This document shows, one piece after another, positions 3,664-60,000 of a DNA stretch of 64,000 nt (position 1 is its first letter; every line of letters starts with the position of its first letter). The position numbers and the translations under genes were made by a program. The notes below the pieces were generated by a model, which saw nothing but the letters and a program-made list of their open reading frames with translations, was not told the DNA's origin and did not search any database. Source of the stretch: Oikopleura dioica (lineage: Eukaryota > Animalia > Chordata); NCBI GenBank assembly GCA_907165135.1, contig OU015568.1:17028477-17092476 (forward strand), in the 5' to 3' direction.

Positions 3664-3796
3664 CGAGAACATAAGAATTGGTTTTTCTAGACATTCTCGC
3701 TCTTCCTGGTTGCGCGATTCTTCCACCAGGAGGAGGTCCTCCACTAGAGAGGTGTTATATAATTTTTACTGGCAAAAGCAAATCAGTCAGTCAGAT

Positions 3797-6700
3797 ATGC
3801 CAATCGCGGTAGATTGGGCAACAGAGGAGGAGTTTCAGCAAGAAGTACGATGGGCGATCCTCGACTGGCTTGATATTATTCGGCGAAATAGTGGCGGCAC
3901 CATCAAGGAGGAAAAGGAAGAAAATCTTCTTCAGATCGATTTCGCAGCTCGATCAGACCAATCTGCTATTCTCAAAAGAATATTACGACGACATAAAGAG
4001 GAGCGTCAGAAACAAATGGAGAACATCAAAAGAGGAAAAGCCATTGTGAACGCGTAAGTTAATAAGAAAATTCATGAAAAAATAACATACATACCTAGAG
4101 AATCCTCAGGTTCAGAAGACAATGAAAAAAACGCGGAAAGCTATGAGGGCTATGAAGACGCGGATTATCATGAAGAAGATGACGCGGCCAGCGATGCAGG
4201 AACTACAACCCTAGTAAATAGTGAACTTCCGCAGCTTAGTGACATCGAAGCTGAGAGCACCCAAAGAACAATTAACTGGCTTCAAAGCTGCCCAGAACCA
4301 CCAAGTCTGGATAACCTCCATACAAAGCATCAGGAAGAACAACAGAATGAACAGGAACAAGAAGGACGCAAAGCAGTTGAAATGATGGAAGGAAAAAACC
4401 GAGAACTGGAAAAAGAGAGAGATGAGCTAAAAGCCGCAACCGAAGAACTCGCAGCCAAAATTGAACAAAGTGAGGCTAGAAACAGGGCTTCCGAGGCAAA
4501 GAAAGAAATGCTTACTGAACTGCTAGAACAAAAACAGAAAGAAAAAGACCGTCTAATAAAGATGAACGCTGAAGAAGAGGCACTTGAAACAGAAAAAGAA
4601 CTTCTAGCAGACATAGAAAAAGAGCATCAGAGCAAGGCAGAACTACTCGCAATAAAGAAGAAAGAGTGTCAAGAATCGGAAGATAAACGACTTAGAGAAG
4701 AAGAAGATAAGCCACAGGCAGATGAAAAGTCCCAACAGGCAAAGAAATTTGTGAATACTGGAAGAGAAACAGAACAAGAAAAGGAAGATAAACAGCTAGA
4801 AACAGAAGAAGGCAACAAACGCGCAAATGATGAGCTACAACAGGCGGAGCAATTTCAGAAAACTGTCAATGAAGCGGAACAAAGACGTCTCCAAGATGAA
4901 ATCAAGGCAACAGAGGCTAATTATGAAAGGCTTACAAAACTTGCCGAACAAAGACAAGAAGAAAAAGACCGTCCAATAGAGATGGAACAGATGAAAGAAC
5001 TAAAATACGCTGAAGAGAAGAAACAAAGTCAAGAATCGGAAGATAAACAACTTAAAAAAAAAGAAGATAAGCCACAGGAAGATGAAATAACGAAAGAAAA
5101 AACGAAAAATGCGGACGCAGAACAATGCCAAGTCGCGGACAATACGAAGACAGGACAAGAAAGAAAAGATAAACAGCTGGAAACGGAAGAACGCGCTAAT
5201 GATGAGCTACAACAGGCGGAGGAATTTCAGGAAACTGACAATGAAACGGTTCAAAAAAATCTCCAGGACGAAGATAAAAATCATCGGCCAAATACAGATT
5301 ATCAACAAGTCAAGAACAACCAAGTAGAAGAAAAGAATGAAGATCGTGTTCAGCAAGATGTTCTCGATGCGAGGGAGAAAAAAAAGAAACAGCGGAAGGC
5401 AGCAAAACAGAAAAAAAAAGATATGAACCGTCAAGAAATCGAAAAGAAAAGGAAAGAAGAACAGCAAAAGGCAAAAGAAGAAAAAGAAAAAAGACAAAAA
5501 GAAGCAAGGGAAGCTCAGGAAAAAGAACAACAGAAGGCAAAAATGAGAAAGGAGAAGAATTTGCGCGATGAAGTAAAGAAAGAAGAAAAAAGGCGACGAA
5601 AAGCCGAGGAAAAAAACCAACAGCACAATCCAAGTATAAGTGAGAGGAATCAAGAAAAGCGAGCAATTGAATCGCATATCAGAGAGAGCGTCAATAAAAT
5701 AAAAAGTCTTAAGATGTCACTTGGTGAAATTAATGAGCAAGACAAGGCGAAAGAAGAACATAAAAATGATGACCTATTACCTCTTCTTTCTCAAGGTAAG
5801 ATAGAAGAAATTCTATGGAATTATAATTTTTCAGATGGACCTGAACTCGTCGGTCCCGGAGATTCGATGGAAATACAATCAAACGTCAGAAAATGGGTGA
5901 AAGGCATCATGAATCCAGACATGAAGCAACAAACCATCGACAAATATGGATATCGCCGCGAGGAATCTAAACAATCAACGAAGAGCGATCCCTCTGTCAA
6001 TTTAAAAGGCAAACCTCGATCTGAAGAGCCACAGTCAGGCAAAAAAATGGATCCACCTATTCCCGCATCCCTTCTTAGTAGCAAGCAGACCGACGACACC
6101 GAAGAAAACCGGCCAAGAGCACCCAAAGCCATCAGACTTCTCAACTCAGAAGAAGACAATACTGAATCACTGAGCGTAGCTGCCGAAAACAACACGTACC
6201 AAGAAAGCATGTACGAAAGACTCAGGCTCAAAAAATCGGTAAAACCAAAGGACACGTCCGTCAAACGAAAACCGTCCAACAAAGATGCAGCACAAAATGC
6301 CACCAAAAAAACAAAAACAGCTAGCAATGCGAAAGAAGATAAAGATAATCTCGACGCACAAGGGAATGAAGACAAAACCGAGCGATCAGCGAAACAAAAT
6401 AAAGCTCCCTCGGCAAAAACTAAAAGGTAACAAATAATTTCCGCGGTACAGAACATAATCATGATCAATAGGAAAAATTTACATGATCGATGCGAGGCAT
6501 TGGCTAAAAAAAAGCGAGAAGAATGGAACAAGAATAAACGAGCAGCTAAAGATCAATGTGGAGATGACGCTTACGATAGCCGAACAGTCAATCCAATAAA
6601 AACAAGCGTTAAGAAGATTGAAAATTTTAGACTCCCAAACCCAAATAATAGGATGACCACACGAGACAAATTAGCAAAAATTAGGAAAAGAGAAATGGAG

Positions 6701-13730: not shown

Positions 13731-14590
13731 AATATGAGGCCTTATATATTTAGCCACAGCGAATCATTGTCAAATATGCTAATCCGACAAACAGTCTTCA
13801 CGCTGGTTGGTCCGCGCATCATACGTTTTCAAGATTTCGACAAATCACATAACGATATGTTCTAAGACCAGATATAAATCGAGAGAACAACATACAATAA
13901 TTTTAAATTACTATTTTGATTGTAAAAAACAATAAGATCAAAGGAATGTCGGATTGGCCGAAAAAAGAAGAGATTTTACAAATAAAACAGCATTAATTAT
14001 GAGTAACTTATGGAGCATTAACCGCGAGGAAACATAATTCTCTACAAAAATCCCATACACGCGTAAATCAATATGATAAACAAGATAAAATCATATCATA
14101 ACCACCTAAAGACAAATTATGGTTTTTGAATAATTCCGAAAAAGGGGATTCTTCAAACTAGAACACAGCAAAAGCGTAGAAAGCGATAAAAACAAACAAA
14201 CCTGTCCACCAACATAATGACGCGGCAATAAATTAATGATAAACACACCCAATTATACAGATACTAAGCAAGAAGCGGTAAAGTAGCGGCCTGCCGGCCT
14301 AAGAAAACCCGTCTTTACGATTTTTTTTTCCAAATTATGATTTTGTTAATTTGGAATTATATTATTTTTTCCAATTTTTGTTATTTTTTTTTATGGAATT
14401 CTGTAAAGAACTGAAAAATAAAAATTTCCATAATGAGAAAATTCACTTACCAGAAAAAAAGTTCCATCCTAAGTAAAAAATTTATTTTTCGATCCATCCT
14501 TGATCAATCCTTTTAGTTACGTTCCATACTAACGATAAACTTTTTATTATGATCCATAGTAAAGAAAACCTTTTTGTTACGTTACATTCT

Positions 14591-17500
14591 TTATTTTTCC
14601 AAAATTAGATAATCGCCGTTGTAAACTTCTCCTTGAGGGCAGCAGTTTCCGGCGAGATCTTGAATCTCCCCTGGTTGACAGGGAGAAACGAATTGACATT
14701 CCGTTTCCGCATTAAAGTCGTTGTAAACAGATATTTGTCCATCTGGGCATTTCTCGCCGCATTGTCCGAGTGTTCCTTGATGGATGCAAATACACATGTT
14801 CCATTTTGAGCTCCATGTAGATCCGACAGGGCAGCACGCGAACGAACCGTCCTCGAAATTGATGACAACGTCGTTCGTCCTGCAAATCGAGGAAAGACAA
14901 ATACCATCGACGTTCGGATACTGGAAAGTGTCAGGGCAGAGACATGCCATTTTGCTAGATTGAGCGTACATGGCGTAGACAAGGCCATCCGGACACGATG
15001 AGGAACAAACTTGGTTGGCGTTTGGCTCGGAGCCATCGTTACAGATGCATCGTTCGTGAGCAGGGCTGTAATGAGCATCTTTGTGGCAGCACACCTGTCC
15101 ATTTTCGGTTTCAATTGGATGGAAATCGAAATTGCAATTAGATGGAGTTCCGGGACATTGCTCGTTTTTGCCGACGATATGTCCCTCTGGACAAAGGCAC
15201 GTATTTGAATCGGAGTTGTAAATCTGGCCTTGCTGGCAGAAGTCCTCACAGTTACCCCAACCACCGTCTTTGAAAAAAATTTGATGGGGCGGGCAAGCTG
15301 GCGAACAACCTGTATTTTCTTCAACAATCGTACTATCAAAGAAGCATTTGCATTGAAGCATACCCTGGTCAAAGTAAGAATTCTCGGGGCAGCAGCCAGC
15401 AGCATCATTGTAAACGTATGGAGTTTCTTGAGGAGCACACACTGGACAATCGCCATTAGGTGTTGGCAGTAAATCGCCCGTGCACACACACATGTCTCGA
15501 TCCTTTTTGAAATATGTGTTTTTCGGACAGCACATGATATCGCCGAAGCGATTGTTGTAAGCTGTTTCGCCATCTTGGCACGTGTTCGAATTGCATTCCC
15601 CGTCGACTGGAGCTTGTCCGTCCCAGCATTCGCATTCGCCCTTGTTGAAGTTGTATTGAAGATCTCCAGGACAGAGTGATTGTTCCGGCTGTATCAGCGG
15701 CGGGCAAGGAAGAGTTGTTGATCCTCCAGGACAAGCGCATTTGTTCATGGTTGGCAAGCTGTCAATCCAAATGAATCCTTCATCGCAACATTGAATCATG
15801 AAAGAGCTATCCAAATGTGGATTTTGCCCTGTCGGACAGACGGGACATTTACCATCGACCATAGGCTCATCAAACTTGCATTTGCATGTTTTTGTTTGAT
15901 TATCGTATTCTGCTCCGAGTGGACAGCAAATTGTTTTCGGGTCGGGACGCACGAAATATTCACCCTCTCCGCAATCATTCGGGCATTCTCCATACATCGA
16001 GTTGGTGAGATACAATGGCTGAGAACGATCTGCACAGAAACAACCAGGAGGTCCCGACATATCTTGCTCAAAATAAAACAAGTTTCGCTGACAGCATTGG
16101 ATATTTCCAAGAGAGTCGAAGATTGCTCGGTCCGGTTGTGCACAGTTTCCGCAAGCTCTGTCATCTGGCTCATCGCCATTGTCACACACGCATTTATTTA
16201 AATTGTAATTCCATTCGGAATTAAATGGACAGCATTGGACGTAAGGTTCGACAAATTGAATGACATGGTTCTCTTCGCAATCGATTTCACATTGTTGGTA
16301 AGTCGACCAATTCGACGCGTAAAAGGGTTCTGTTCGATTATCACAGAAGCACCCGCCTGGCCCAGTATCATCACCATCGTACCAGAATAAGTTTCTTTTA
16401 CAGCATTTGACGTTTCCGAATTCGTCCATATGAGCTCTTTGGTCTGTACTGCATTGACCACATGCAGTATCGTCGACTTCATTATTGTTAGGGCACTCGC
16501 ACTCATCCGTAATCGAGTTGTACTGAGTTCCGTAGGGGCAACATCCTAGAGTCGGATGATTAGGCCCGACGAAATACGTTCCTTCTTCACATTCGTCGCC
16601 ACATTGCGGGAAATATGATGGAGGTAAATTGATAGCTTCCGAGCCATCTTTACAGCGACAGTGACCACCAGCAGGATTATTCTCATCAGCAATCCAGATT
16701 TGGTTTCTCTCGCAACAACGAATAGCATCATTTTGATCCAATAAGGCTCTCATTCCTGGATCGCTGCATAAGCCACAGGCAGTATCATCAACAACCTCTC
16801 CGTTCGGGCACATGCATTCATCACCGATCGGATCATAAACGCTTCCGATTTCACAACAAATCGTCCTTGGGAAAGCTTGAATGAAAACTTTATCCTCGGG
16901 ACAATCGCCTGGACATTCTCCATTTGGCTCTGAATTGGATCCGTCTTTGCAGTAACATCCAGCAACCGTGTAGTCATCTTCGTCGAACCAGACCTTATTT
17001 TTCTCACAGCATTGCACGACGCCATATTGATCAAGATGAGTTCGTTGGCTGATTGAACAGTAGCCACAGCCAGTTTCATCAGGAATCTCAGCAGGGTCAT
17101 TTGGACAATAACATTTGCCATCTGTGTCACTCCAGTAAGAATTAAGCGGACAGCATTCAATTGTTGGATAGACACTTTGAAGCCAGTAACCATCTCCGTA
17201 GTCAATGCATTCGTTGCCACAAGAGCCCATCGGCCCATCAGGATAACTTCCATCTTCGCACATACAAGCGCCATAGGTTGTTACTACTTGGTTGATTTGA
17301 CAGCACTGTGTTTGATTATTACTATCTGTCTGCAAGACGGTCGGTGGTGGACAAGGCGGACAGCCAGTATCTGGATCGTAAATTCCACCATTATTGCAGA
17401 TACAGGAATTCATCCACGAATCGTAGCTTGAGTCATTAGGACAGCAAAGGACTTCGTCAATATTTGAGGCAAAAAAGAAGCCAGGTTCACAATCACCTGG

Positions 17501-20500
17501 GCATTCACCATTCTGCCATGGCGGAGAATTGTTCTCAGGACAGAGACACTCGTAAGGAGAATTGGAGAAGATTTGATTTGATTTACAGCAAATTATTGCA
17601 CCGTTGTCTTTATTAAATCCAACGATTTCGTTGTCCGAGCATTCGCCACAGCCAGTGCCATTAAGAGGCGCTCCGTTTGTGCAGTGACAGCCAAGATCGG
17701 AAGTCCACTTAGCTCCGATTTCGCAACACTCGAGAGGCTCAAACGATCCAAGCCATTCACCTTCATCACAATCATTTGGACAGTTCATGCTGTAGCCTGG
17801 AATGCTTCCGTCAGACTTGCAAATACACTGTTCAACTCCTTGGTCGAACATTTGATTCTTATGACAGCACCGGGGGTTCTGTGACGCGTCGAAATAAACA
17901 TCTTTGTGTTCAGGGCAATATGGGCAAGTATCATTTACTATAGCGAAACCACTGTTGCATTTGCAGAGTTTGTCGGCCATGTCATACCAGGAGTTCTCCG
18001 GGCAGCATTTGATGGGATCTAACGTGTCTGTTGGATCGACATATCCAAGAATCTGTCCAGGGTCGCAATCGCCGGGACAGCCTCCATATTGATCAAAAGG
18101 GTCGCCATTCGGGCATCTGCAGTCATCAATCTCCAGCGAGTATTGATGATTAATTTGGGGTTTCCTTACTTGGTAAAATTCCTTACTTGGTAAAATTCCT
18201 TACATGGTAAAATTCCTTACTTGGTAAAATTTTTTTTCTTTACCAAGTAAGGATTTTTACCAAGTAAGGAATTTTACCAAGTAAGGAAATTTCTATCGAG
18301 CAAATGTCAAAAACAAATAATGAACATATTCACTTTAGAAGATATCTAGTCGACCCCCCTCTGAACATAATTTTTTCAAGGATTATTTTTTTTTGAATTA
18401 TTTTTTTTTGAAAAAATTGAATAATCTTGATTCGAGCGCGTTCGAATTCGGGTTCATTTTCAAATTCGTGTTTGGAATCGTATTTGAATTTCGGATCCAT
18501 GACCCATGTCAAAGTGGACAATTTGACCGATGGCCCATCGGCGATGGGGGTTAATTGATAAATATATTATCTAAATGAGTTTTTAAATTCAAACTAAGTT
18601 CAAAACAATTATTTTAACAAGTGAAACTTATAAAAGAAACGTCATTTGAAAAATAAATGTCTCTTCTTAGGACCCTCCACTCACGGTTGGGTTCGCAAAA
18701 TCGCTTGTTCTAAAAAAAAATTTTTAAGGCTATAACGTCTCTTTTGGCCTCTCTGGAAAACGCACTTCCCTTGGTCGATTTCAAAAATTAAAAAGACTCA
18801 TATACTTAAAATCTATCGTAGATTTCAGAAATGCGATCAAAAATTTATTTTTCTTTTGAAATTTCGACTTTACAATCATTTAAAAAACGCCGATCGGTTT
18901 TCCGAATAATTTTACCATTACAGAGGTAGATTTTTTACGATCAATTTATAGACTAAAGCCTTCTCTACAATCCCCACGGAAAAAAACTTCGATATCTCTT
19001 CAAATTTTCATTCTAGGGCAGGGCTGGCAAATTAGGGTCCTAACAGCCGCACTACCGAAAAATTGTTAGGGTTCTAACTCAAAATTAGTGCAAATTAGTG
19101 CGGCATCCCCGTCCTACCCGTCCTATTTTTTTTCCTTGATATTTTTTCGTCCATTAGGACCGAATCGCCGCCCTAACCGCACTAATTTGGAGGCTCTTTT
19201 TCATCATCCAATCGGCGCGCGCTTCCCACCAGGCGCGGAGGACAAATTGGTGGAAGATTGAAAAAAGAATGCAGCTGAATGGATGAGAAAAACGAATGAC
19301 CCGCCATGATTGGCGGACCAATAAGCGCGCGCCTATTTTAGGACGATTTTAGTGCGGCTTTTCCAACTCTCGTACTACTCGCACTAAAAAGTTATAAAAT
19401 GAGAGTTAGGGCCCTAACAATAGGGTTCTAACTCAAATTAGTGCGGCTGGCGGGACCCTAATTTGCCAGCCCTGTTCTAGGGCCATGTTAGTGCTGGCAC
19501 CTGAGGAGAAAAAGGCGCGTGGACGCGCTGCGCGGAGTGCTATCCTCCAGCCCGAAAAGAGAGCGCTGTTGGCGAGCGTGTGAGTCAAGCGATTCATCGC
19601 GCTTTGATTGGCTGCGCGGAGCTCAAGCGTCAGTCTATAAACAAAAGAGACTTAAAAGAAGAGAGAACTAGAATCATAATTTTCACAATTTCTTGAAATT
19701 TTTTCCGTAGGGATCATAGAATATGCTTTTTTAAATAATATTGTCGGATTTATTTGACCTTAGAGCTTCCAGTTTTCTCGGAAAACCGATCGGCGATTTT
19801 TGAATGATTCTAGAGCAAAAAATTACCAGAGAAAATTATTTCTTGATGGCATTTTTGAATTTTTAAGGAGAAAACAAATATGTTTGCCCTTTAAATTTTT
19901 GAAATCGACCAAGGGAAGTCCGTTTTCCAGAGAGGCCAAAAGAGACGTTATAGCCTTAATTACTTGGCCAAATTATTTCTCTGTACTAGAGATTGAAGAT
20001 TAGGCCTCGGTCTATCTAAATCTAGTCGGAGATGATGTCTATCTAAGCCCGAATCGGCTGAATTTCGACTCAAAAATAGCCTAAAATGGCCTTTTTCGAA
20101 ATTCTCGAACTTTGGCCCCTCCTTGTAGTAGGTTTGCTTTGAACAAAAAACTTCTCTGTACTAGAGAATAGCGGATAGCACCTGAGCTTTACGTAGAGCT
20201 ATTGTTTGCCCAAATACATAAGCGCAAATCGGCTGAATTTCCAGTCGAAGATGGCCAAAACGAGGGGGATCCCTTAAATCTGATCAACAAAATCAAAATT
20301 TTCTTAACAAAATTTTCAAAAGTTTGGATAGATCTCTCCATATTTGAATCCAAATTTGAACGCAACGGCTAGAATAATTTTAAGAATGAAGATTATTCAA
20401 TTTTTTCAAAAAAAAAATAATTCAAAAAAAAAATAATCATTGAAAAAATTATGTTCAGAGGGGGGTCGACTAGATATCTTCTAAAGTGAATATGTTCATT

Positions 20501-23500
20501 ATTTGTTTTTGACATTTGCTCGATAGAAATTTCCTTACTTGGTAAAATTCCTTACTTGGTAAAAATCCTTACTTGGTAAAGAAAAAAAATTTTACCAAGT
20601 AAGGAATTTTACCATGTAAGGAATTTTACCAAGTAAGGAATTTTACCAAGTAAGGAAACCCCGATTAATTTTGCAGCATAAAATATCACCATTACTGTTT
20701 ATAGCGGGATTAAATACGCCATCATCGCCCACATTGATATCACAGTATCCACAAGCGTTGTTGTTTTGGTATGATTGTCCGTTCGGACATTTGCATTCCT
20801 GATCTACTTGATCGTAGTACTCTCCAGCTTTGCAGCATTTTAGCTCGGGATCCTGTTGGACGACAAACAGGTCAGCAGACACACAATCACCAGGGCATGC
20901 ACTCATGTAGCCGGGGAGACTATCATCCTTGCAAATACATTTGCCGGTGTCTTCTATGTACTTTTGGCTATTAAGACAGCATTCCAATAAATTCCCGGCA
21001 GTGTCGTAGAAGGGCGATCTATTTGGAGAGCAGGGAGGACAGGTATTATTAATGACAGGGCTGCCACTATTGCAAAGACATTCACCCGAGTCAAGATAAG
21101 CCCCATCAGGGCAACAAATAAGTGTGTTGTTCAGATCGATTCCAGCAGGATACATACCAGCATTGCAATCGCCAGGGCATGAGCCGAATGCCAATGGCAT
21201 CGATTCATCTTCGCAAACGCATCCCGTAGTACCGTTTACCCATTTTTGATTTCCAGGGCAGCACTTTGTCATTCCATTATCAAAGTCCAAGAATGCGTTT
21301 GAATTCTCGGGACATTGTCCGCAATAAGTCGAATCAAGAGGTCCTCCATCGCTGCATTTGCATTCGCCTTCCTCAAAGACTGATCCAAGTGGGCAGCACT
21401 GGAACGGATGTGGCTGAACAAGATATTCGCCTTGAGCGCAGGTATCCTCGCACATCATAAACGGACCCAAAAAGATCCATCGGAACATGCACAATCGTCG
21501 AGATCTTCCGACCACTCAGTATGGGCAAAGCAGCACTTTTCTTCTCCATTTGATGTCCAATGACTTGACATGTGTGTCGGACAAAGAGGGCAAGGACTAT
21601 CACCAGCTTCACTTCCATCTGGGCATTGACACTGCTCAAGAGCGGAATTGTAAGCACTTCCTAACGGGCAGCAAATAACCTCGGAGTATTCTCCAACGAA
21701 GAAAAATCCTGCTGCACAATCACCTGGGCAACTTCCATCCCCGTTTGGTGGTAACCCATTGCTACAGGTACAATCATTGGCATTTGGACTGTAGATCAAA
21801 TTGCTTGCACAACATTTGTGAGCGCTCCATTGCCCACCGGTCTGGAATGCGATTTGGTTTGAATTGCAAAGATTGCAGCCTGTCTCTACATCCGGCTCAT
21901 TGCCCGTCTGATCACAGATGCATGTGGCAGTTTGCACTCCGTTCATCATTTGCAATGATGATCCGACTGGACAGCAAATTAGCTCGCCGCCCAGAATATC
22001 CGAAAGATATTCTTCTTGAGGGCAATCGCCTGGGCATTGCATATTTTGATCAGGATTACTTCCGTCTTCACAAGTGCAAGAGTAATCTGTCAGGACCTGA
22101 TTTAATGTGCAGCACATTTTATTTCCATTAGGATCGGTCCATTCTTTCTCTCTGTTATTGTTACAGTATGGACATTTGTTATTTTCGTAATCATATGTTC
22201 CACCGTTTGGACAAGTACAAGTATCAGTAATTGCGGAATATCCAGTTTCTCCAGGACAGCAAACAATATCACCTTTATTGTCAAGAAAGAACCTCTGGCC
22301 GTATGGGCAATCTCCTGGGCATTCTTGTGGATGGGGATTGTAATCACCATTTCCACCTTGAGTGTTGTAGCTTGATCCAGGATTGGTTTTGTCTGGGCAT
22401 CTACAATTTCCCTCGTGCCAGATTTGATTTTTTGGACAGCATCGGACTCCGTCAGCAGTAATCAAAGCAATATCCATCTGTGCGCAATCATTAACTTCGC
22501 AACGGTTGTCGACCAGTGCGCCATTGAAACAGATGCATTCTTCTGCATTTGCATTCCAGTATGCTCCAATAGGGCAGCAAATTTTCTCGGGATAGAATTG
22601 CTCCATAACTTCTCCGAGCTCACAGTCTCCTGGACATTGCGAGTTATATGGGCGTGTACCATCCATACAGCGACACTCGTCCCAGGAGAGATCAAAGTAT
22701 TGATTTGTACGGCAACATCGGGTATTTCCACTGTTGTCGAAATATATTTGCTCGTCAACAGCACACATAGAGCAACCAGTGTCTGGATCGGCTTCATTTT
22801 GATCGGGGCACATGCACTTTTGAAAACTTACATCCCACCAAGAACCAATTGCGCAGCAAATCATCTCTCCGCTATCTTTGAACTGGATCCATTTCCCGAC
22901 TGGACAATCGCCTTTGCAAGTCGCTGGCGAGAATGTCGGGGTGAGTGGTTGACCCTCGCATTCGCACTGATCCGACTGGTAGTTGAACTTCATATTCTTT
23001 TGGCAGCAGATTTCGCTACCATCCCTTTTTCTGTATGCAATTTCTTTGTTTGAACAGAAACCACAGCCGGTCTCACTGTTTGGAGACGTTCCGCCGGGAC
23101 ATTTGCAAACATCTGCTGAGCCGTCCCACATCATACTTCCACCAACAGCGCAACACAGATCCTCGCTCCATTTGTACCAGCCTGGGCTACAGTCGCCTTC
23201 GCAGGCATTGTTGTAGCCGAGATATTCTCCATTGCACATGAACTCATTTCGCCAAGGATACCAGATTTTTCCTGGAGGACAGCAAGCAATCTGTTGATTG
23301 CCGTTGTAAGAATCATCCCAAGGTACTAGGCCGGGACCACATGGTGTTGGACAGCCATTGACAGGGTCTGGTGGGTTATTATCAAAACAGGTGCAAGTTA
23401 CATCATCATATCCATTGATAGTCGGGGTTGAGCCAACTGGGCAACAAAATTTTTCGTCCAGCGTCCTGTGAGCAAGGTATTCTCCTGCCGGACAATCACC

Positions 23501-26500
23501 TGGACATTGAGGAGGCCCATAATTGGTCGGCCATGACTGTGATCCGTCTGGACAGGTGCATCCGTCGTTAATTTCATCATAAACCATATTATTTGGGCAG
23601 CACATGGGACCATTTTTTCCTTCGTACATTGTATCGAAAGATCCACAATATGGACACAAATGTGTGTCTGGGTCTGGCGAAATTCCTGCATCCAAGAACA
23701 TTCCTGGCGGGTTGCAAATGCATTTCTCGCGATCTTGGTCGTAAAATGAGTTAGCTGGGCAGCAAAGAAGCTCTGGCGTATTTTTGGCGAAATTGAAGAG
23801 CCATGGACAGTCCCCGTTGCATTGGCCGTCTCCGAATGGGTATTGTCCATCAGAGCAGACGCAACCCATTTGATTGTCACTCCAGTGCTGATTCGCTGGA
23901 CAACATTGGATATTATCATACATATCGGTGAAGGAAGTTAAGCCATCGGGACATGGCGGACAGACGTAGTTTTCCATGTCAGCTTCGATTCCGTTTTCGC
24001 ACATGCAGATACCGTTCATGTTGTTGAAGCCGGTGAAACCATCGTTTGGACAGCAAATGACTCCGAATTCATTCGACTGGTACGTAGTTCCCGGTGGACA
24101 ATCACCATTGCATTCGCCATTAGCGCCGGGAGGGTCTCCGTTCTTACAAACGCAAGATTGTCCGTCGAATTGATGATTCTGACCGCAGCAGTGGATGTTC
24201 TTTCCGTTGTCGTAGTGGACAGTCATAGATTGAGGACAAATCCCACAAGTCGATTCACCGTTAACTATTTGTGGCTCCATATTAATGTAGTTCCCATTTT
24301 GGCAAATACATTTTTTCAGGTCATTGTCATAATCGGATCCGATAGGACAGCACTCTCTCTCTGGAGCTGGGCCGGCAAGATACCAACCAGCAGGACAGTC
24401 GCCATCACATCCCGTCCATCCGTGCGGCATCGATCCATCTGAACACTGACATCCGGCAAAATTGAAATATCTTCTGTTTTCTGGGCAGCAAGTTGTGTCG
24501 TCGTGATTCATCCAAAAGGGAACTTCATTTTGAGCGCAGCCGGTGCAAGAGTTCATTGATGTGGCTTCGTTACCACTGTTTGTGCAGAAGCAAACCAACG
24601 CAGGACTATTATACTGAAGCTCAGATCCAACAGGACAGCATGATTTAACGTTTTTGTAAATCGGGATTCCAGGTTTCCGATAGATAGAAGCCAGGATCGC
24701 ATTCACCGTAGCACTCTCCCCGAGGACCAGGCGGTTGTCCGTCTTGGCACAAGCAAACACTTCCTCCGAAGCTGTACTGACCTTCAGGACAGCAGATTGG
24801 TTCCGAACTACCAGGACTAACGAAAGGAACCAACTCTGACGAGCAGTAGTAACAGCCGCGTTCAGGATGAGGTGTATCTCCTGCATTCGGTTCCGGGCCA
24901 GTTCCACCATTCCATCCATAGTCGCATCTGCATCGTTGTTCACAAGGGCTGTTGTCAAACCACGAGCCAACGGGACAGCAAAGACTGTCACCGTCAAGAC
25001 TGTAGCCATAAAGATATTCTCCAGTAGGGCAATCTCCTGGGCAACCGTAGCCTTGGTCTTCCGCTCCATTTGGACAGGCACACTTTTGCATGATGTCACT
25101 CCACACGTGATTTTTTGGGCAACAAACTTCTACGCCGTTGTCTTTCTTTTGTTTGTGATGATTTGTTGCGCAAAATGGGCAGTTGCCGTCAACATCTGGT
25201 GCGGTCGGGGGAGAGAGGTTATCGCAAGCGCAGCCGACAAAGCCGTTGTTGTCAACGAAAGATGTTCCAGGAGGGCAGCAAGTGATTTCAGGATACAATG
25301 AGCCGAGAGTTGTTCCAGCTGGACAGTCTCCAGGACATTCGTTAGTGAACATGTCTGGCTTGTTGACCCCATCCTGGCAGAAACAAGTCCCAAGAGTCTC
25401 GTTGTACGTTGATTGCCCAGGGCAGCACTCGATTCCGTTGAAGACTTCGAATTCTCGGAAACCAGGGGGACAAACAGAACATTTTCCGATGCTTTTATAG
25501 GGTTGAAAATCTAAAGACGACTAGCGAAGAATGAAAAAAGAAATGTTAATTGATCATGTTATCATTTTTTTAAATAAAGACAACCGTAGCTTGAATCGAC
25601 TGTTTGCCAGTTTCCGAACTGATCCGGGCATTGAACTTGATCTCGGCAGGTGTTGGGGTCCCAATGGTATGACGCACCCTGGGGAAGACAGAACCAGCCT
25701 TCATCTTCTGACCAGTAGAGCTTTGTCCAATATGGACTCTTTGGGCAGTCCCCGGGACATTCGTTTGGCTCAAGACCATTCGCACCAGGAATTGTTAAAT
25801 CTTGACAAATGCACATTGAGAGTTTAGTGCTCCAAACTGTGTTGTGTGGGCAGCATTCTGTTCCGCTATTTTCCGTGTTCCAGAGACTACTCCCTTATTT
25901 ATGGTTTTCAGAATTCACGGTGTGCATTTACAATGTATCAAGCTATGATTCGTGAAAAACCATGCCTTTAGGACATTCCTTGCAAAATCCATCTTCATCA
26001 ACTTCTTGCCCGCCGCACATGCATGAGTGTGACTTTGAGTCGTAATACGCATTTTGGTGACAGCAAGTGATCGGATCGCTCAGAACTTGAACGAAATCAA
26101 TTGGGCAGTTGTTTCGAGGAGTTGCATCAGCCTCGGCAACTTCTGGCTCTGATTCGGGCTTGGTTAGACATCCTTTTTGATTTCCAATAGCTTGGCGAGT
26201 TCAAATAAATAAGATTGATTTTTAGAAAATGATTAAGGAAAACTGGCTTTTGATAAATTTATAAGACGTTTTTTTTTCTTCAAAATTCAAATTAAAATAT
26301 TCTCAAACGTTTGTGTTTGATTTGAACCTTTCATGAGATGCTGCTAGGATCACATTCACAGCATCCATTCGAGCCACATCTCAGTCCAGGTTGAAACGAC
26401 TCGCAGGATGCATCATCGCTGCAAGTTCCGAAGTAGCAGCTCTTAATTTACTCGTCTATATTTTTTCGCGATCATTTATTTAGCTATCTACCTCTCCGTC

Positions 26501-26860
26501 GCTCCCAGCTCCAGCTTTTTCCTCGCAACCGTCCATAGGATCGTTGTTTTTATCGACGAAGCCATCGGCACAGACACACTTATTTATCGAGAGATCACAA
26601 GTGAGTCGGGCTGCTCTACTGTCCTCAAAGCCCGGCTTCTGAGCAATCTTCCATATGGAACAGGCCTTGTCTGACTCGCAAGCAAGAACTGGCCAATAGT
26701 CGCCGTCGTCGGTGAAGAATCCTACGCCAGGTGACCCGGCAAGGGCAGCAGGGAGGAAAAGCGCAGACAGCTAAATTAATCGTTACATGATTTTTGAAAA
26801 ATCTCTGGCGATTCTCTTTATCTTGAATATAAATAAAATAAACTCAGAAAATACCTTCAT
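14591..26860 (-). CDS. Giant secreted cysteine-rich repeat protein (~3,100 aa when reassembled), interrupted by a nested transposon insertion
   Basis: Starts MK|LSALFLPAALA (signal-peptide-like; ATG at 26860). Introns 26854-26771, 26491-~26448, GA-AG 26332-26191, GC-AG 25965-25894, and one more ending at 25511. ORFs 24645-25352, 21455-24640, 20643-21515 and 14591-18148 share a CCP..CxC..DG..P..C.G.C repeat. Removing 18157-20662 plus one TSD restores CCKINHQYSLEIDDCRC in frame. Two 1-nt homopolymer frameshifts (24651-24655, 21469-21473). Confidence 0.85.
18728..19955. mobile_element. TTAA-flanked TIR element (Kolobok-like by TTAA TSD and 5'-GG terminus), nested in the foldback element
   Basis: TTAA at 18724-18727 and 19956-19959. 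TIR GGCTATAACGTCTCTTTTGGCCTCTCTGGAAAACG.ACTTCCCTTGGTCGATTTCAAAAATT at both ends. Confidence 0.8.
19019..19474. mobile_element. hAT-type MITE (456 bp) nested in the TTAA element
   Basis: TIR CAGGGCTGGCAAATTAGGGTCC; 8-bp TSD TTCTAGGG at 19011-19018 and 19475-19482. Confidence 0.9.
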
Positions 26861-54081: not shown

Positions 54082-57000
54082 ATGGTGGTCATCAGGTCAT
54101 GCGTTCAAATTTCAAAATTTAAATTTCTTTTATTTCAATTTCAGCGTTAAAATGAGAATTCTAGCGTTTTCGGAATTTTTTTTAAAATAACTAAAATTGT
54201 GTCTTCTCCGAAATTGTGAACCCGTGATCAGGCCAGGTGATCACGTGTGGCTGACCAGCCATGGCGATCAAAAACTGCCCGTTGCAATCGGCGCTCAGGA
54301 CTGGCTCAGACAAGGGATCAATCAAAAATTAATTGAGCTGCTGCGAATCTCCATTATATACACGCGGCTTTATTAATTAGAAAATGTGCTCTCAGCCTCG
54401 CTAGATCAAAAAGTCAGAAGGTGGAAAGCTACTGCTCATCGACGATCAAGAAAATGGTTTTCGAAATGAATAATTCAAGTTTTTATTTAATTATTGACGA
54501 AAGTTGAACATTTTGAATTTGATAAATATTGAATCAAAAAATAGAGGGCTCTTGAAGTCAAAATTGGCATCTACTTGAAAAAATATTCAGCAGGAAGGGC
54601 ATGTCCATACTATGGACAGACCTAGATATTTATAGGCAATTTCGACCTTCGAAAACCAAGGCTAAGAACATGAAGTCTGGATCGAAATCGCCAAAGCGGG
54701 CAAACAAATCAAGGAAAGAGTTTAAAAGATGAACTTTGCCTAAGAGGCAATCACAGATCCGCCCCTTCGAGGGTTTAAAAGCGGATTTAAGGATAAACCA
54801 AAGCTGTTGACTTCGTCGACACAAGGTTTATTGTTTGAACTCGGGAAAGGCGATGCATCCGACTTCGCAAAGTGGCGTGGACGATATGATCCGACTTGGA
54901 GACCTCAACGAAGCGGGCATTTTGAGGAATCTTCATCTCAGATACAAGAACAACAAAATATACACTTTCACTGGCGCGATCTTAGTCGCAGTGAACCCTT
55001 ATCAAATTATAAAGGAACAAGGTCGACATTGAACAGTTTCTCCTAAGAATTACGGTAATGGAGGGGTTATAACTTGTAAGTCCCGAAGCCTAACCTAGGT
55101 GGCTACGCCCCTCGAGACCCCAAGCAAGTACTTTCAGTCCACCAACCCTAATCTTTTTTTTCGATCTTTGAAAGGGTATCTACGATCCGTCAGAAATCAA
55201 GCGATACACAAACAAGAAGATCGGAGAACTTCCCCCGCATATCTTCTCCATTGCCGACAATGGTTAGATTCAATCGACTCAATTTTAATTTTCAATCGCT
55301 CCGTTTTAGCCTACTACAATATGCAGAGGAACAATCGGGATCAATGTGTTGTGATTTCTGGAGAGTCTGGCGCAGGAACGTGTTAAAAGCAAAATAATCG
55401 TCTAAAGTAAGGGAACCTTAGTAACAAAACTATCCAAAAACGGTCAGCGGCAAGCAAGAATAGTTAACTGACAAGTGAGACATTTGGGTCAGCTTTGGGA
55501 GCACTTACTGTCAACACGCGAAACAGGAAAGACTGAATCTGCCAAATTACTGTTACAATTCTTGGCCGAAGCGTCTGGCCAGCAGAATATGGAACAAAGA
55601 ATCGAAAAGCAAATCCTAGACTCGAACCCAGTTCTCGAAGCCTTTGGAAACGCGAAAACTGTTAGAAATGATAATTCATCGCGTTTTGGAAAATTTATTG
55701 AGCTGCAATTCAACAGAAGAGGGGCGATTGATTCGGCAAGGTAAAGTCAAGAAAACCTAACCTATTTTGGAGTACGGTATAAATACCGTGGATACGTCTT
55801 TTCTTCCAAATTTAAAGCCTTAGATTTACTTGTAGTAAAAAAAAATTCAGAATCGAGCAGTATCTTCTGGAAAAATCGCGTCTCGTCCGCCAGAGCGAGC
55901 AAGAACGAAACTACCACATTTTCTACTACATGTTGGCTGGAATGAGCGGCGAGGAGAAGACGCGTCTGGGCCTGACCAAACCCTCAGACTATCAATACCT
56001 CTCCCAGGACAACGTGAACAAGGCACTGTCGAACAAGTGCTACGGAAAAGGGCACGGTTCGTGTCTCTTCGTTCAGGGCCACAACGACGCTGACGAGTAC
56101 CACAAGCTGATGGATGCGATGAAAACGCTGGGCTTCAAAGACGTCGAGTTGCGAGAAACGTTCAAATTGCTCGCAGCGCTTCTGCAAATTGGAAACTTCG
56201 AGTTCGAAGAAGCGATGATTGACAACCTCGATGCTTGCCATTTGATTTACAATTCCGGCGTGAAGCAAGTCTGCGCGCTGCTGGAAGTCATCGATGATGT
56301 CCTAATCAAGTCGATCACGCACCGAACTTTGAACATGAGAGGCGAAGCTGTTACCTCGCCGATGAATATGAACATGGCTAGGGACGTAAAAGATGCTCTT
56401 GTCAAGGGAATCTATGGAAGGCTTTTCGTCTGGATTGTGGAAAAGGTCAACTCTACCGTCAACAAAACTAAAGGTCTGTATTGAGGCCTATCCCAAGATT
56501 GTCCACTAGAATTCTGAAGAGCTCGTGTTCTGTATGTGTTATGTATTGTAATTACGAGACCGTAAGCCATCCGTGTTAGTATAGTGGTGAGTATTCCCGC
56601 CTGTCACGCGGGCGACCGGGGTTCGATTCCCCGACACGGAGACCTTTTTCTCTATCTCACCTTTTACCAACCCTTTAATTTAGATGGCGTCAAGCGAAAA
56701 AGAAAAGATGATCCCAACCGTGGTCACTCAATCGGTCTTCTCGATATTTTCGGCTTCGAGAACTTCGGCAAAAACTCTTTCGAGCAACTGTGCATCAACT
56801 TCGCAAATGAAAACTTGCAGCAGTTTTTCGTCCGACACGTTTTCAAAATGGAACAAGAAGAGTACGAGCGAGAAGGGATCCACTGGCGGAGCATCGAGTT
56901 CACTGATAACCAGGACATTCTGGACATGATCGCCGCCAGACCTATGAACATTTTGAGCTTGATCGATGAAGAATCTATGTTTCCGCGATCTACTGATAGA

Positions 57001-60000
57001 ACAATGTTGATCAAGCTGTCGCGAACGCATGGAAAGAACAGGTTGTTTGAAGCTCCACGAAATCAATCAGTCTCCAGCTTCTCTATCCGGCACTTTGCTG
57101 GTACTGTTTCTTACGACACGGCTGGTTTCCTCGAGCGAAACAGAGACACATTCCACGGCGATTTGATTCAGCTCATCCGAAGCTCGAAGAACAAATTCTT
57201 GCATTTCATTTTCCACAAAGATTTGAAGAACTCTTCGATTCATCAAAAAGAGCGCCCACTCTCTGCGAACAGTTCCGAAAATCACTGGATTCGCTGATGA
57301 GAACATTGATCAAATGCCAGCCTTTCTTCGTTCGATGCGTCAAACCAAACGACATCAAGCAGCCGGGACTGTTCGATCGGGAACTGGTCTGCCAGCAGCT
57401 TCGATATTCTGGAATGATGGAGACGATCCGAATTCGGCGTCAAGGCTATCCGATGCGATACGAATTCGCTGCCTTTATTGATAGGTACCGGGTTTGTATC
57501 GGCGCGATGCCTCGCTCAGCTGTCAACCAGAACTTGAAGGAATCTGCCTCGAAGATTTGTCGGCTTATCCTCAAGGACGATGAATGGCGAGTTGGATTGA
57601 CAAAGGTTTTCCTCAAGGACGAACACGATGTTGAAATGGAAGTTGGTCGAGAAAAAGCTCTCCTCAAATACGTCCTCGTTCTCCAACGAGCTATCCGGGG
57701 ATGGTACGCGAAAAGAACCTTCCAGCGTCTCAAAAGATCCGTTGTCAAGATTCAAGCGCTTTGGCGAGCATACAGAGCGAGGAAAGCTTACAGAGAGATG
57801 ATTCAAGGTTATGGTCGACTGCAAGCTCTCTGGAGGGCCAGAAGACTCGCTTTTAGATACAACTTTGCAAGAAAGCGTATTATCGGCTTACAGGAACGGA
57901 TTGAGCTGTTTTGAGGTCAACCGACCAAAAATCCAATTGATTTTTGGATCGTAATTATGACCTTTCCTCTCATCCGTGTTAGTATAGTGGTGAGTATTCC
58001 CGCCTGTCACGCGGGCGACCGGGGTTCGATTCCCCGACACGGAGAGTTTTTCCTTATCGTTACTCAGGGTGTGATCACTTTTTGCTCAATCCCCTGAAAG
58101 GCCTACATCAGAGGACATATGATGAGAAACCACATCGTCGCCAAGCGAGATGCCATTGTCACAATTCAAGCGTACACAAGAGGAATGATCGACAGAAAGA
58201 ACTATAGGAAGCTTCTGTTCCTCAGAGCTTGTGAAGAACTTCCAGCGAAGGAGAAGAAGAAAAGACTTGAGGAGTTTGAAACAGCAGAAAAGGCTACCTT
58301 ACAGTCTCTGATTGAGAAAAGAAAGAGATCGCAAGTCAAGACTTCGAAGAAGAAAGACAAGGAGAGAGAAAGAGAGCAGTATCAGGGACGGTCAGAAATG
58401 AAAAATGGCATCTTATTGTGTGTCTTCCATGCTATTTTTTGACCAAAGAAAGGATTATCATTTCGAAAAAGCCGCAGCGATGATGTCTGAATCAGAATCG
58501 GAAGAAGAAGATGCAGGAAGAGCTGCAATTGTAGAGGAAGTGGAAGAAGACTTGGCTGAATACTCGTTCCATAAATTCTCCTCGACCTACTTCGTGAGCG
58601 CTTCAACGTGTAACTTTTCGAAGCGCCAAATCAGAGAACCGCTGCTTCATATTGATGATGAACACTCACGCAAAGTGGCTCTCTGCATTTGGACAACGAT
58701 TCTTAGGTCAGTTAACAGATTATTTAAAGGCTCTAATTGCCCTATAAAGATTCATGGGAGAGTTACCCGAGTCCAAGTACAACAAGGCCGACATTGAGGA
58801 AATCGAAATTGTACCAGTCATGACGAAAATTTACGAAACGATGGGACTGTCCTACGCTCGAGGAAGAGGAGTGCTCGATGAGAAAGACAAGGAAAAGGAA
58901 GATAACAAGAACAAAATGATAAAAATCAAGCTTGGAAAAACAGCGACCACAGATCATGATCCTCGACGATTTGTTGACAAACCCTCGACAAATCTTGAAA
59001 AACTCCATTTTATAATAGGATCTGGTAAGAACTCGTCATTTTCTAGTCTCAAGCGGAATTTTAGGAATTCTCCGACCACATCTACGTGATGAAATCTACT
59101 GCCAAATAATGAAGCAACTCACCAATAACAGCTCGCGACCCTCTCACGCTCGAGGATGGCTTCTCATGTCTCTCTGTCTCGGTTGTTTTGCCCCGACTGA
59201 GCGGCTCACAAAAACTCTCAAGAACTTCCTTCGAAATGGCCCTGCCAGTTACGGGCCTTACTGCGAAGACAAACTTCGCCGAACACTTTTGAACGGGACC
59301 CGGCAGCAGCCCCCTAGCTGGATGGAACTTACAGCAGCAAAATCAAAGAAGCCGATCATGATTACTGTGACTTTCATGGATGGTACAACGAAGTCGCTTC
59401 TTTGTGACAGTGCAACTACTACACGAGAACTGACAAAGAGTTTATCTGACACGATTAATTTAACAGACACGTTCGGATTTTCCTTGTTCATCGCGCTTTT
59501 CGATCACGTCGAGTCTATCGGATCTGGCAACGACCACGTGATGGACGCGATCAGCAGATTCGAGCAAATCGTCAAGAAAGACGGCGCCCAGGAACGACAC
59601 GCGCCCTGGAGAATCTTCTTTAGAAAAGAAATCTTTAGCCCGTGGCATAAAGCTGAAGAAGACAAGGTCGCTACTAATTTAATCTACCACCAGATTTGCC
59701 GAGGCGTTAAATTCGGCGAATACAAGTTTGATTCTGACGAGAAAATGGCGGATCTAGCGGCGAAGCAGTACTACATCGAGTTTGGCAGTGACATTTCCGG
59801 GTCGAAAGTGATGCCAGTAGTGCCACAGTGGATTCCTGATCGAGTCCTGTCAAAGAAATCTCCATCCAAGTGGGCAGCTTTGATCGTCGACCGCCACAAA
59901 CAAGGAGAACACGTGCGAGGAAGATGGGAGCCAAAGATGGTAAAGGACCACATCGTCAATCGAGCTCGTTTTCACTGGTCGATTCTCTTCAGCAGATTCT

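What the first reader, a model, noticed from the sequence alone, without database searches (positions are those of the whole stretch)
18165..20646. The foldback insertion could be spliced out in frame: candidate intron gain in progress
Seen on the gene's strand: the entry TIR gives ACT TG|GTAAAA (GT at 20646) and the exit TIR gives TAAG|G AAA CCC CAA ATT AAT CAT (AG ending at 18165). Splicing 20646-18165 (2,482 nt) removes the stop and leaves KIN-RGFLTWKPQIN-HQY, an 11-aa in-frame footprint in a loop between cysteines. A second pair (G|GTTTCC with CCAAG|) is also in frame. GTAAAA is also the predicted donor of RTEL1 intron 10271. Inference: the 17-bp TIR unit supplies a donor in one orientation and an acceptor in the other, so this family could act as an introner. 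Caveat: a random donor/acceptor pair is in frame one time in three.
Basis: partly seen in the sequence, partly recalled or inferred. Interest (0 to 1): 0.75.

Follow-up and report, generated by a model that had tools for sequence, protein, structure and literature searches.

The report
Hairpin transposon splitting an Oikopleura exon
A 2.5-kb hairpin-ended jumping gene sits in the giant coding exon of a secreted cysteine-rich protein gene of the tunicate Oikopleura dioica; it could be spliced out in frame on paper, but chance would usually allow that and nothing shows that it happens.

Summary
A 2,506-bp foldback-type transposon (18157-20662) lies in the minus-strand giant exon of gene g13235 of O. 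dioica OKI2018_I69. It has 260-nt inverted ends built of 17-nt units and a perfect 9-bp target duplication. GT at 20646 and AG at 18165 remove 2,482 nt and leave an open 11-codon footprint.

This pair works in all three codon phases and in both orientations, because 16 + 8 + 9 nt = 33. That is weak evidence. Eight GT-AG pairs here are in frame and stop-free, and 17% of shuffled 22-nt ends give the same all-phase property.

The family has about 13 copies and looks Mutator-like. Only one to three copies lie in ORF-like sequence, so it is not an introner family by distribution.

The would-be intron is 50 times the species' median. Both splice sites pair with each other in a very stable stem. Identical competing sites lie 17 nt apart. 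The footprint would stretch a loop beyond the range seen in 49 sister modules.

The public gene model already bridges the element, using a different GT-AG pair. It also bridges two frameshifts with false introns, so it proves nothing. No RNA data or orthologue was reachable. The scan has reported many similar exonic foldback insertions elsewhere in this genome.

The parts
18157..20662 (.). Composite non-autonomous foldback-type (Mutator-like) transposon, 2,506 bp
   Evidence: Inverted repeat I1. Both termini read GGGGTTTCCTTACTTGGTAAAA. Flanked by a 9-bp duplication.
18148..18156 (.). Target-site duplication, copy 1 (GATTAATTT on the plus strand)
20663..20671 (.). Target-site duplication, copy 2, identical 9/9
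18157..18416 (.). Terminal inverted repeat arm at the gene's exit side. It is itself a hairpin of 17-nt units, three forward and four reverse on the gene strand.
   Evidence: I1, I4, D1, D2; local fold -89.8 kcal/mol, z -15.5
20403..20662 (.). Terminal inverted repeat arm at the gene's entry side, four forward and three reverse 17-nt units on the gene strand
   Evidence: I1, I6; local fold -82.7 kcal/mol, z -13.6
20641..20646 (-). It overlaps the in-frame stop TAA at 20645-20643.
   Evidence: Three identical GTAAAA copies follow at 20629, 20612 and 20595.
18165..18170 (-). The AG at 18170/18169 is the acceptor used by the public gene model.
20690..20695 (-). Exonic cryptic donor ACA|GTAATG, used by public model g13235.t1 with AG 18169. 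The modelled intron is 2,527 nt.
18724..19959 (.). Nested MITE, layer 2, with 182-nt arms and TA flanks
   Evidence: I2. The family has at least 20 copies of about 770 bp at 91-96% identity.
19013..19480 (.). Nested MITE, layer 3, inside layer 2
   Evidence: I11. The family has at least 20 copies of about 456 bp at 96-99% identity, so it is young.
14591..26860 (-). Host gene: a giant secreted Cys-rich modular protein (public model CAG5091767.1, g13235.t1, 2,843 aa, which maps to 25816-14594)
Evidence: ORFs. Model mapped to the window. Name and accession. 49 CC...CxC modules.
21469..21473 (-). T5 run where the reading frame shifts by 1 nt inside a module, either an assembly indel or a real lesion
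   Evidence: The public model hides it with a 53-nt 'intron' cut out of coding sequence.
24651..24655 (-). A5 run where the reading frame shifts by 1 nt inside a module
   Evidence: The public model compensates with a 40-nt 'intron' and about 45 out-of-frame codons.

Best explanation
This is an ordinary insertion allele that probably disrupts the gene. A non-autonomous Mutator/Foldback-type DNA transposon, which also carries two nested MITEs, cut-and-pasted into the giant exon of gene g13235 near the end of the pseudo-autosomal scaffold of Oikopleura dioica OKI2018_I69 and duplicated 9 bp of target. Shown: the element, its ends, the duplication, the family, the restored ORF and the stop six codons in. 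Inferred: most transcripts of this allele keep the stop. They would either retain the element, use one of the identical downstream GTAAAA or stronger GTAAGG sites, or end at an internal AATAAA. The likely products are a truncated protein of about 1,660 residues or mRNA decay. An in-frame spliced product is at best a minor by-product. The in-frame GT-AG pairs follow from the 17-nt unit, which contains GGTAA and CTTAC (read as GTAAG on the other strand). These units are most simply kept as transposase-binding repeats, not as splice signals.
For: The 9-bp duplication is perfect, and one 1,469-codon frame is restored when the element is removed. TAA follows six codons into the element. Ten of the other copies show the same ends, nine with an exact 9-bp duplication. 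The family has 24 termini, so about 13 copies. The 9.2-kb copy has a MULE-domain ORF at E 1e-4. Only this copy lies in a long ORF. In-frame pairs are expected by chance. On the gene strand there are four identical GTAAAA donors 17 nt apart, of which only the first avoids the stop, plus seven GTAAGG and two AATAAA. In the minimum-energy fold of the 2.6-kb pre-mRNA the donor and acceptor nucleotides pair with each other, in a stem running from 20662:18157 inwards. The candidate intron is 2,482 nt against a species median of 49 nt (PMC8008620). The footprint would make the CC-to-CxC loop 23 residues long, while 49 sister modules have 10-17 with a mode of 12.
Against: 1,188 codons downstream of the insertion are still open. 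That fits a very young insertion, but it also fits continued selection on a spliced product. In the centroid of the local entry hairpin the outermost unit, which carries the proposed donor, is unpaired, so U1 could reach it before the far arm is transcribed. Short candidate introns elsewhere in this genome, read by eye, use GTAAAA donors and TAAG acceptors. Oikopleura tolerates about 11% non-GT/AG introns and has introns up to a few kb. Earlier notes of this scan report many exonic foldback insertions in essential genes of this genome, one said to be cleanly spliced in RNA (not checked by me).
Confidence: 0.55

Rival explanations
1. Newborn intron. The element is removed from the pre-mRNA by the spliceosome at one of the in-frame pairs (20646/18165, or 20695/18169 as in the public model), and this happens often enough to keep the gene working. 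Pairing of the two ends would bring the splice sites within 8 bp of each other.
For: In-frame, stop-free pairs exist. The (16,8) pair works in any phase and either orientation. The downstream 1,188 codons are intact. The outermost donor unit is unpaired in the centroid local fold. The end-to-end stem juxtaposes the two sites. Transposon-derived introns with inverted ends and target duplications are documented in the sister larvacean Fritillaria borealis (Henriet 2019, as reviewed in PMC11282704). The AUGUSTUS model trained on this species accepts an intron across the element.
Against: There is no RNA evidence. The public model also invents 40-nt and 53-nt introns inside coding modules to bridge 1-nt frameshifts, so it is ab initio patching. 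Identical competing sites sit 17 nt apart. Both sites are buried in a stem in the minimum-energy fold. The length is 50 times the median. The footprint, or the loss of the CC pair in the annotated version, gives a module unlike its 49 sisters.
Confidence: 0.3
2. Introner family. The ends of this transposon family have been shaped so that any exonic insertion can be spliced out, always leaving a 33-nt open footprint. The family would then be a generator of new introns.
For: The 16 + 8 + 9 = 33 geometry is open in all three phases and in both orientations. The geometry is kept in three of four terminal sequence variants, including one where the sequence around the AG differs (CCTGG in place of CCTTAC, L046). 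Two further copies may lie in coding sequence: L048, an 88-bp copy in a GPCR N-terminus, and L046.
Against: There are only about 13 copies, most in non-coding sequence. No copy was found as an established intron. 17% of shuffled ends give the same property. The variant GGGGTGTCCCTTCCTGGTAAAA (L037, L044) leaves 34 or 38 nt, which is out of frame. Conservation of GGTA in the termini is expected for transposase binding. Known introners leave little or no footprint and occur in hundreds to thousands of genic copies (PMC11282704).
Confidence: 0.07
3. The host gene copy is already dead, so splicing is irrelevant. It carries two 1-nt frameshifts upstream of the insertion and lies in a transposon-rich chromosome end.
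For: Frameshifts at the T5 run 21469-21473 and the A5 run 24651-24655 fall inside otherwise regular modules. Nested transposons and neighbouring mobile elements are present.
Against: Both shifts are in homopolymers in a Nanopore-based assembly. A third shift of the same type (A5 at 57245-57249) lies inside a conserved myosin motor domain in the same window, which points to residual assembly errors. Apart from these the gene has no stop in about 2,900 codons.
Confidence: 0.15

Closest known systems
Foldback / Mutator-like (MULE) DNA transposons, e.g. Drosophila FB elements (my own knowledge of the class)
   Same: Long inverted ends built of short tandem subrepeats, each arm able to fold back on itself. 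A 9-bp target duplication. Mostly non-autonomous copies of very variable length (88 bp to 9.2 kb here). A MULE-like transposase ORF in the longest copy.
   Different: The MULE match is below Pfam's own cut-off (23.1 against 27.6 bits), and no catalytic residues were checked. The family is specific to this genome as far as searched.
Introners of Micromonas, Aureococcus, dinoflagellates and others (Huff, Zilberman and Roy 2016; Gozashti et al. 2022, as cited in PMC11282704 and PMC13326754)
   Same: A DNA transposon with inverted ends and a target duplication, whose ends could supply the splice sites when it lands in an exon.
   Different: Introners are high-copy, mostly genic, demonstrably spliced and usually leave no footprint, because the target duplication helps to build a splice site. 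This family has about 13 copies, mostly outside ORFs. Splicing is unproven, and the best pair leaves 11 codons.
MITE-derived non-canonical introns of the larvacean Fritillaria borealis (Henriet et al. 2019, summarised in PMC11282704)
   Same: Same animal class. Introns there have inverted ends and target duplications, showing that larvacean spliceosomes can neutralise transposon insertions.
   Different: The Fritillaria introns are short, numerous and mostly AG-AC or AG-AT. The candidate here is a single 2.5-kb GT-AG case in Oikopleura, where about 89% of introns are canonical.
Maize Ds, dSpm and Mu insertions in exons that are removed by splicing at sites in their termini, giving leaky alleles
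   Same: The closest mechanistic analogue. Cryptic donors and acceptors in repeated subterminal motifs, several alternative pairs, and small in-frame footprints left in the mRNA.
   Different: Shown by cDNA in maize. Here it rests on sequence alone.

Membership tests
Foldback/Mutator-like DNA transposon | Long terminal inverted repeats composed of tandem subrepeats | tested here: met
   260-nt arms, 97% complementary, 17-nt units
Foldback/Mutator-like DNA transposon | 9-bp target-site duplication | tested here: met
   Exact 9/9 here and in 9 of the 10 other copies with both ends mapped. L038 matches only 8 bp, offset by one position.
Foldback/Mutator-like DNA transposon | MULE-type transposase in autonomous members | tested here: inconclusive
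   ORF L052:3725-4222 matches PF10551 at E 1e-4 with 23.1 bits, below the 27.6-bit cut-off
Introner (transposon family that generates introns) | Many copies, most of them being introns of genes | tested here: not met
   24 termini, about 13 copies. Of 11 mapped copies, one lies in a long ORF and two are doubtful.
Introner (transposon family that generates introns) | Element and/or target duplication supplies both splice sites | tested here: met
   On paper only. GT after nt 16 and AG 8 nt before the end, valid in all phases, but not beyond chance.
Introner (transposon family that generates introns) | Removal from mRNA shown by transcripts | not testable with these tools
   No RNA reads were reachable. 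Protein-fragment and metagenome searches found nothing for this gene.
Functional spliceosomal intron of O. dioica | Length and signals typical of the species | tested here: inconclusive
   2,482 nt against a median of 49 nt, though introns of a few kb exist. No splice-site model for the species could be built from the DNA at hand.
Functional spliceosomal intron of O. dioica | Splice sites accessible in the pre-mRNA | tested here: inconclusive
   Both sites are paired in the global minimum-energy fold. The donor unit is free in the centroid of the local fold, and the acceptor is weakly paired.

The most novel reading that the evidence does not exclude
Oikopleura's permissive spliceosome may routinely remove hairpin-closed foldback insertions from exons. 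This family's ends (donor after nt 16, acceptor 8 nt before the end, 9-bp duplication) would then give a universal 33-nt open footprint in any phase and orientation. On that reading the copy in g13235 is an animal introner caught at birth, with only the outermost units left free by the arms' 4-versus-3 unit asymmetry to define the splice sites.
Probability: 0.1. Interest if true: 0.75.

Novelty: new member of a known kind. Interest (0 to 1): 0.3.

Why it matters
Larvaceans are the animals with the fastest known intron turnover, and in their relative Fritillaria most introns descend from transposons. A documented case in Oikopleura of a fresh exonic transposon being spliced out would show the first step of that process in an animal that can be cultured. 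This locus gives clear, testable junction predictions. As it stands it is one more unproven candidate among many similar ones the scan has noted in this genome. Its practical value is as a caution: the public gene model at this locus hides a transposon and two frameshifts behind predicted introns.

Tried and rejected
1. I tried three times to build a splice-site model for the species from the DNA at hand, using ORF-bridging candidates, an EM refinement and a codon-usage filter.

2. I looked for other individuals or transcripts. The upstream 240 aa found nothing. The downstream piece found only a 32% paralogue-like O. dioica protein. The metagenome scan found nothing. A full-length search with the public model found only itself. 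The exhaustive HMMER search found the public model plus three weak hits. So there is no empty-site orthologue and no transcript fragment.

3. I searched the assembly for a second allele or paralogue with the empty site. Both flanks are unique, and protein-level matches are only repeats within the gene plus one distant locus.

4. The pseudogene reading based on the two frameshifts is weakened by a third homopolymer shift inside a conserved myosin motor.

5. hAT, P and Merlin classifications were considered and set aside because of the consistent 9-bp duplication and the MULE-like ORF.

6. Dating the insertion from the 3% arm-to-arm divergence was rejected, because cut-and-paste moves arms together with any differences they already carry.

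7. The Denoeud 2010 genome paper could not be read under the id I recalled.

Flanks were searched apart by reference, and joined frames were only checked inside scripts.
Full report
**What is there.** On the minus strand a very long open frame is interrupted at 20662-18157 by a 2,506-bp element. The frame encodes a Cys-rich modular protein. The element's arms, 18157-18416 and 20403-20662, are 97% complementary over 260 nt. They are built of 17-nt units, and each arm is itself a hairpin. Both termini read GGGGTTTCCTTACTTGGTAAAA. The element is flanked by a perfect 9-bp duplication, AAATTAATC on the gene strand, at 18148-18156 and 20663-20671. Removing the element and one duplication copy restores a single frame of 1,469 codons across the site, reading ...ILCCKIN|HQYSLEIDDCRC.... 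With the element in place the frame ends at TAA 20645-20643, after RGFLTW.

Every item checks out. GT is at 20646/20645 and AG at 18166/18165. The removed stretch is 2,482 nt and the footprint is RGFLTWKPQIN. The second in-frame pair, GT 20659 with AG 18169, is also correct. The GTAAAA at 10271 is present and could start a short AT-rich intron ending in TTAAG.

**Whose genome.** The assembly has 64,281,565 bases in 19 contigs, and the window is the last 64 kb of a 17,092,476-bp contig. These figures match the O. dioica OKI2018_I69 assembly: 64.3 Mb, 19 scaffolds, longest 17.1 Mb. That assembly was made from Nanopore reads polished with Racon and Pilon, with haplotypes merged from one male of about 3.6% heterozygosity. 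Its median intron is 49 bp and 11% of its introns are non-GT/AG (PMC8008620). The exhaustive protein search returned a 2,843-aa protein that maps exactly onto this locus. It is CAG5091767.1, Oidioi.mRNA.OKI2018_I69.PAR.g13235.t1, on a contig of the same length. This settles the organism and the locus: the end of the pseudo-autosomal scaffold.

**The transposon family.** A search with the terminal 22-mer, allowing 2 mismatches, finds 24 termini and none in the reversed-pattern control. That corresponds to about 13 copies, from 88 bp to 9.2 kb. Ten other copies have both ends mapped, and nine of them show an exact 9-bp duplication of unrelated sequence. Copies share only the arms and a short internal piece of about 100 nt. 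The 9.2-kb copy (L052) has an ORF matching the MULE transposase domain at E 1e-4, below Pfam's cut-off. With the 9-bp duplication and subrepeat arms, this points to a Mutator/Foldback-type family. The window copy also holds two nested MITEs, at 18724-19959 and inside it at 19013-19480. Their families have at least 20 copies each, at 91-96% and 96-99% identity. No other copy of the outer family carries them.

**How special is the in-frame pair?** The donor lies after element nt 16 and the acceptor 8 nt before the element's end, so with the 9-bp duplication the residue is always 33 nt. I checked all three phases. This pair is in frame and stop-free in each, and in phase 0 it is the only pair internal to the element. 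Because the termini are symmetric, the same holds in the other orientation. At this site each of the four available GT donors has two in-frame, stop-free AG partners. That makes 8 GT-AG pairs, or 21 with G[ACG]-AG. Among 20,000 shuffles of the 22-nt terminus, 46% give some in-frame pair and 17% give one whose footprint is open in all phases. Of the four terminal sequence variants in the genome, three keep the geometry and one does not: L037 and L044 leave 34 or 38 nt.

**Is the family introner-like?** No, by distribution. Of 11 copies with mapped ends, only the window copy lies in a long ORF. The L046 copy lies in an open stretch of at least 220 codons of unknown nature. The 88-bp copy in L048 lies 33 codons into an N-terminal ORF of a GPCR gene that otherwise looks intact. 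An in-frame ATG just downstream means it may instead sit in the 5' UTR. The copy number is a dozen, not hundreds.

**Would the spliceosome do it?** Several points argue against.
- The candidate intron is 50 times the median length.
- The donor GTAAAA recurs identically 17, 34 and 51 nt downstream, and only the first copy avoids the stop.
- Seven GTAAGG sites and two AATAAA signals lie on the gene strand inside the element.
- In the minimum-energy fold of the 2.6-kb pre-mRNA, the first nucleotide of the element pairs with the last and the stem runs inwards. The donor and acceptor nucleotides are therefore base-paired to each other's arm.

Other points argue for it.
- The entry arm has four forward and three reverse units. 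In the centroid of the local fold the outermost unit, which carries the proposed donor, is single-stranded.
- The exit arm mirrors this, with its last unit only weakly paired.
- End-to-end pairing would place the two cut sites 8 bp apart.
- Short candidate introns that I read by eye use TAAG acceptors and one has a GTAAAA donor. These are my predictions, not transcript evidence.

I could not build a splice-site model for the species.

**The product.** The site lies in the loop between the CC pair and the CxC of a module. In 49 modules of this protein that loop has 10-17 residues, with 12 in 29 of them. The footprint would make it 23 residues. The public model's alternative deletes SNGDILCCKIN, including the CC pair, and adds IRKPQIN.

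**The public annotation.** Model g13235.t1 already treats the element as an intron, but from GT 20695 (exonic ACA|GTAATG) to AG 18169, a span of 2,527 nt. The same model bridges two 1-nt frame shifts with a 53-nt and a 40-nt 'intron' cut out of regular coding modules. After the 40-nt one it reads about 45 codons in the wrong frame. AUGUSTUS was run with RNA hints, but this behaviour shows patching to keep an ORF. I give the model no weight as evidence of splicing.

**Is the gene alive?** The two shifts lie in a T5 run (21469-21473) and an A5 run (24651-24655). A third shift of the same kind (A5 at 57245-57249) lies inside a conserved myosin motor domain in the same window. Residual Nanopore indels are therefore the simpler reading, and the gene is probably intact apart from the transposon. 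No Pfam family matches the protein. Its only relatives are O. dioica proteins, one of which UniRef names 'Silk-like'. It may be a house-matrix protein, but that is my inference and untested.

**External evidence.** None could be found. There is no allele or paralogue with the empty site in the assembly. No protein fragments, orthologues or metagenome contigs were found. Pieces were searched apart by reference.

**Context within the scan.** Earlier notes on this genome list many foldback or TIR insertions in coding exons (COQ8, RPB1, DMXL, POLA1, an ERM-like gene, a VWA gene and others). Nearly all lack RNA evidence. One, EBP2, is said to be cleanly spliced. I did not check these. They show that this locus is one of a class already noted on other DNA of the same genome.

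**Verdict.** The most likely reading (0.55) is a young, disruptive Mutator/Foldback insertion allele whose in-frame splice pairs are a by-product of its repeated end units. Real splicing as a newborn intron remains possible (0.3) and is easy to test with RNA from carriers. The introner-family reading is unlikely (0.07). The concept is known from introners, from Fritillaria and from maize Ds/dSpm, so this is a new member of a known kind.

Noticed in passing
window 14594-25816 (minus strand): Public gene model CAG5091767.1 (g13235.t1) hides three defects behind predicted introns: the transposon (2,527 nt) and two 1-nt frameshifts, bridged by 53-nt and 40-nt 'introns' cut out of coding modules. 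After the 40-nt one, about 45 codons are read in the wrong frame. The model also starts at 25816 and omits upstream exons, including a likely signal peptide near 26860.
   Followed up: yes
window 57245-57249: A 1-nt frame shift at an A5 run inside a conserved myosin motor domain ([14 protein letters not shown] / [13 protein letters not shown]). Together with the two shifts in g13235, this suggests residual homopolymer errors in this chromosome end of the Nanopore assembly.
   Followed up: partly
L052 (G000:C3:1610825-1620048): A 9.2-kb copy of the same family with duplication TAATTATGT. It holds a weak MULE-domain ORF (3725-4222), further ORFs without Pfam matches, and an antisense coiled-coil gene (5132-6563) in the middle. 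It may be the autonomous or cargo-carrying member.
   Followed up: partly
L048 3081-3168 (G000:C2:6302180-6302267): An 88-bp single-hairpin mini copy with duplication CATGAAGAC, 33 codons into the N-terminal ORF of a GPCR gene that otherwise looks intact (DRY-like, CWLP and NPLLY motifs downstream). An in-frame ATG just after it means it may lie in the 5' UTR. This is a better-sized test case for splicing than the 2.5-kb copy.
   Followed up: partly
window 19013-19480 and 18724-19959: Two nested MITE families. The inner one (about 456 bp) has at least 20 copies at 96-99% identity and looks recently active. The outer one (about 770 bp, TA flanks) has at least 20 copies at 91-96%.
   Followed up: partly
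L034 and L035 (G000:C3:74997 and 84329): Two copies of the family share the same left flank and duplication (AAATGGATC) 9.3 kb apart. This indicates a segmental duplication that includes the element.
   Followed up: no
window 56480-56720: An intron of the myosin gene contains a sequence that looks tRNA-derived and SINE-like; one frame translates as GSIPRHGD. The same motif recurs near 57950.
   Followed up: no
window 14407-14451 (minus strand): A textbook 45-nt GTAAGT...TTTTTCAG intron-like segment lies about 140 nt downstream of the stop codon of g13235. It suggests a 3' UTR intron or another small exon there.
   Followed up: no
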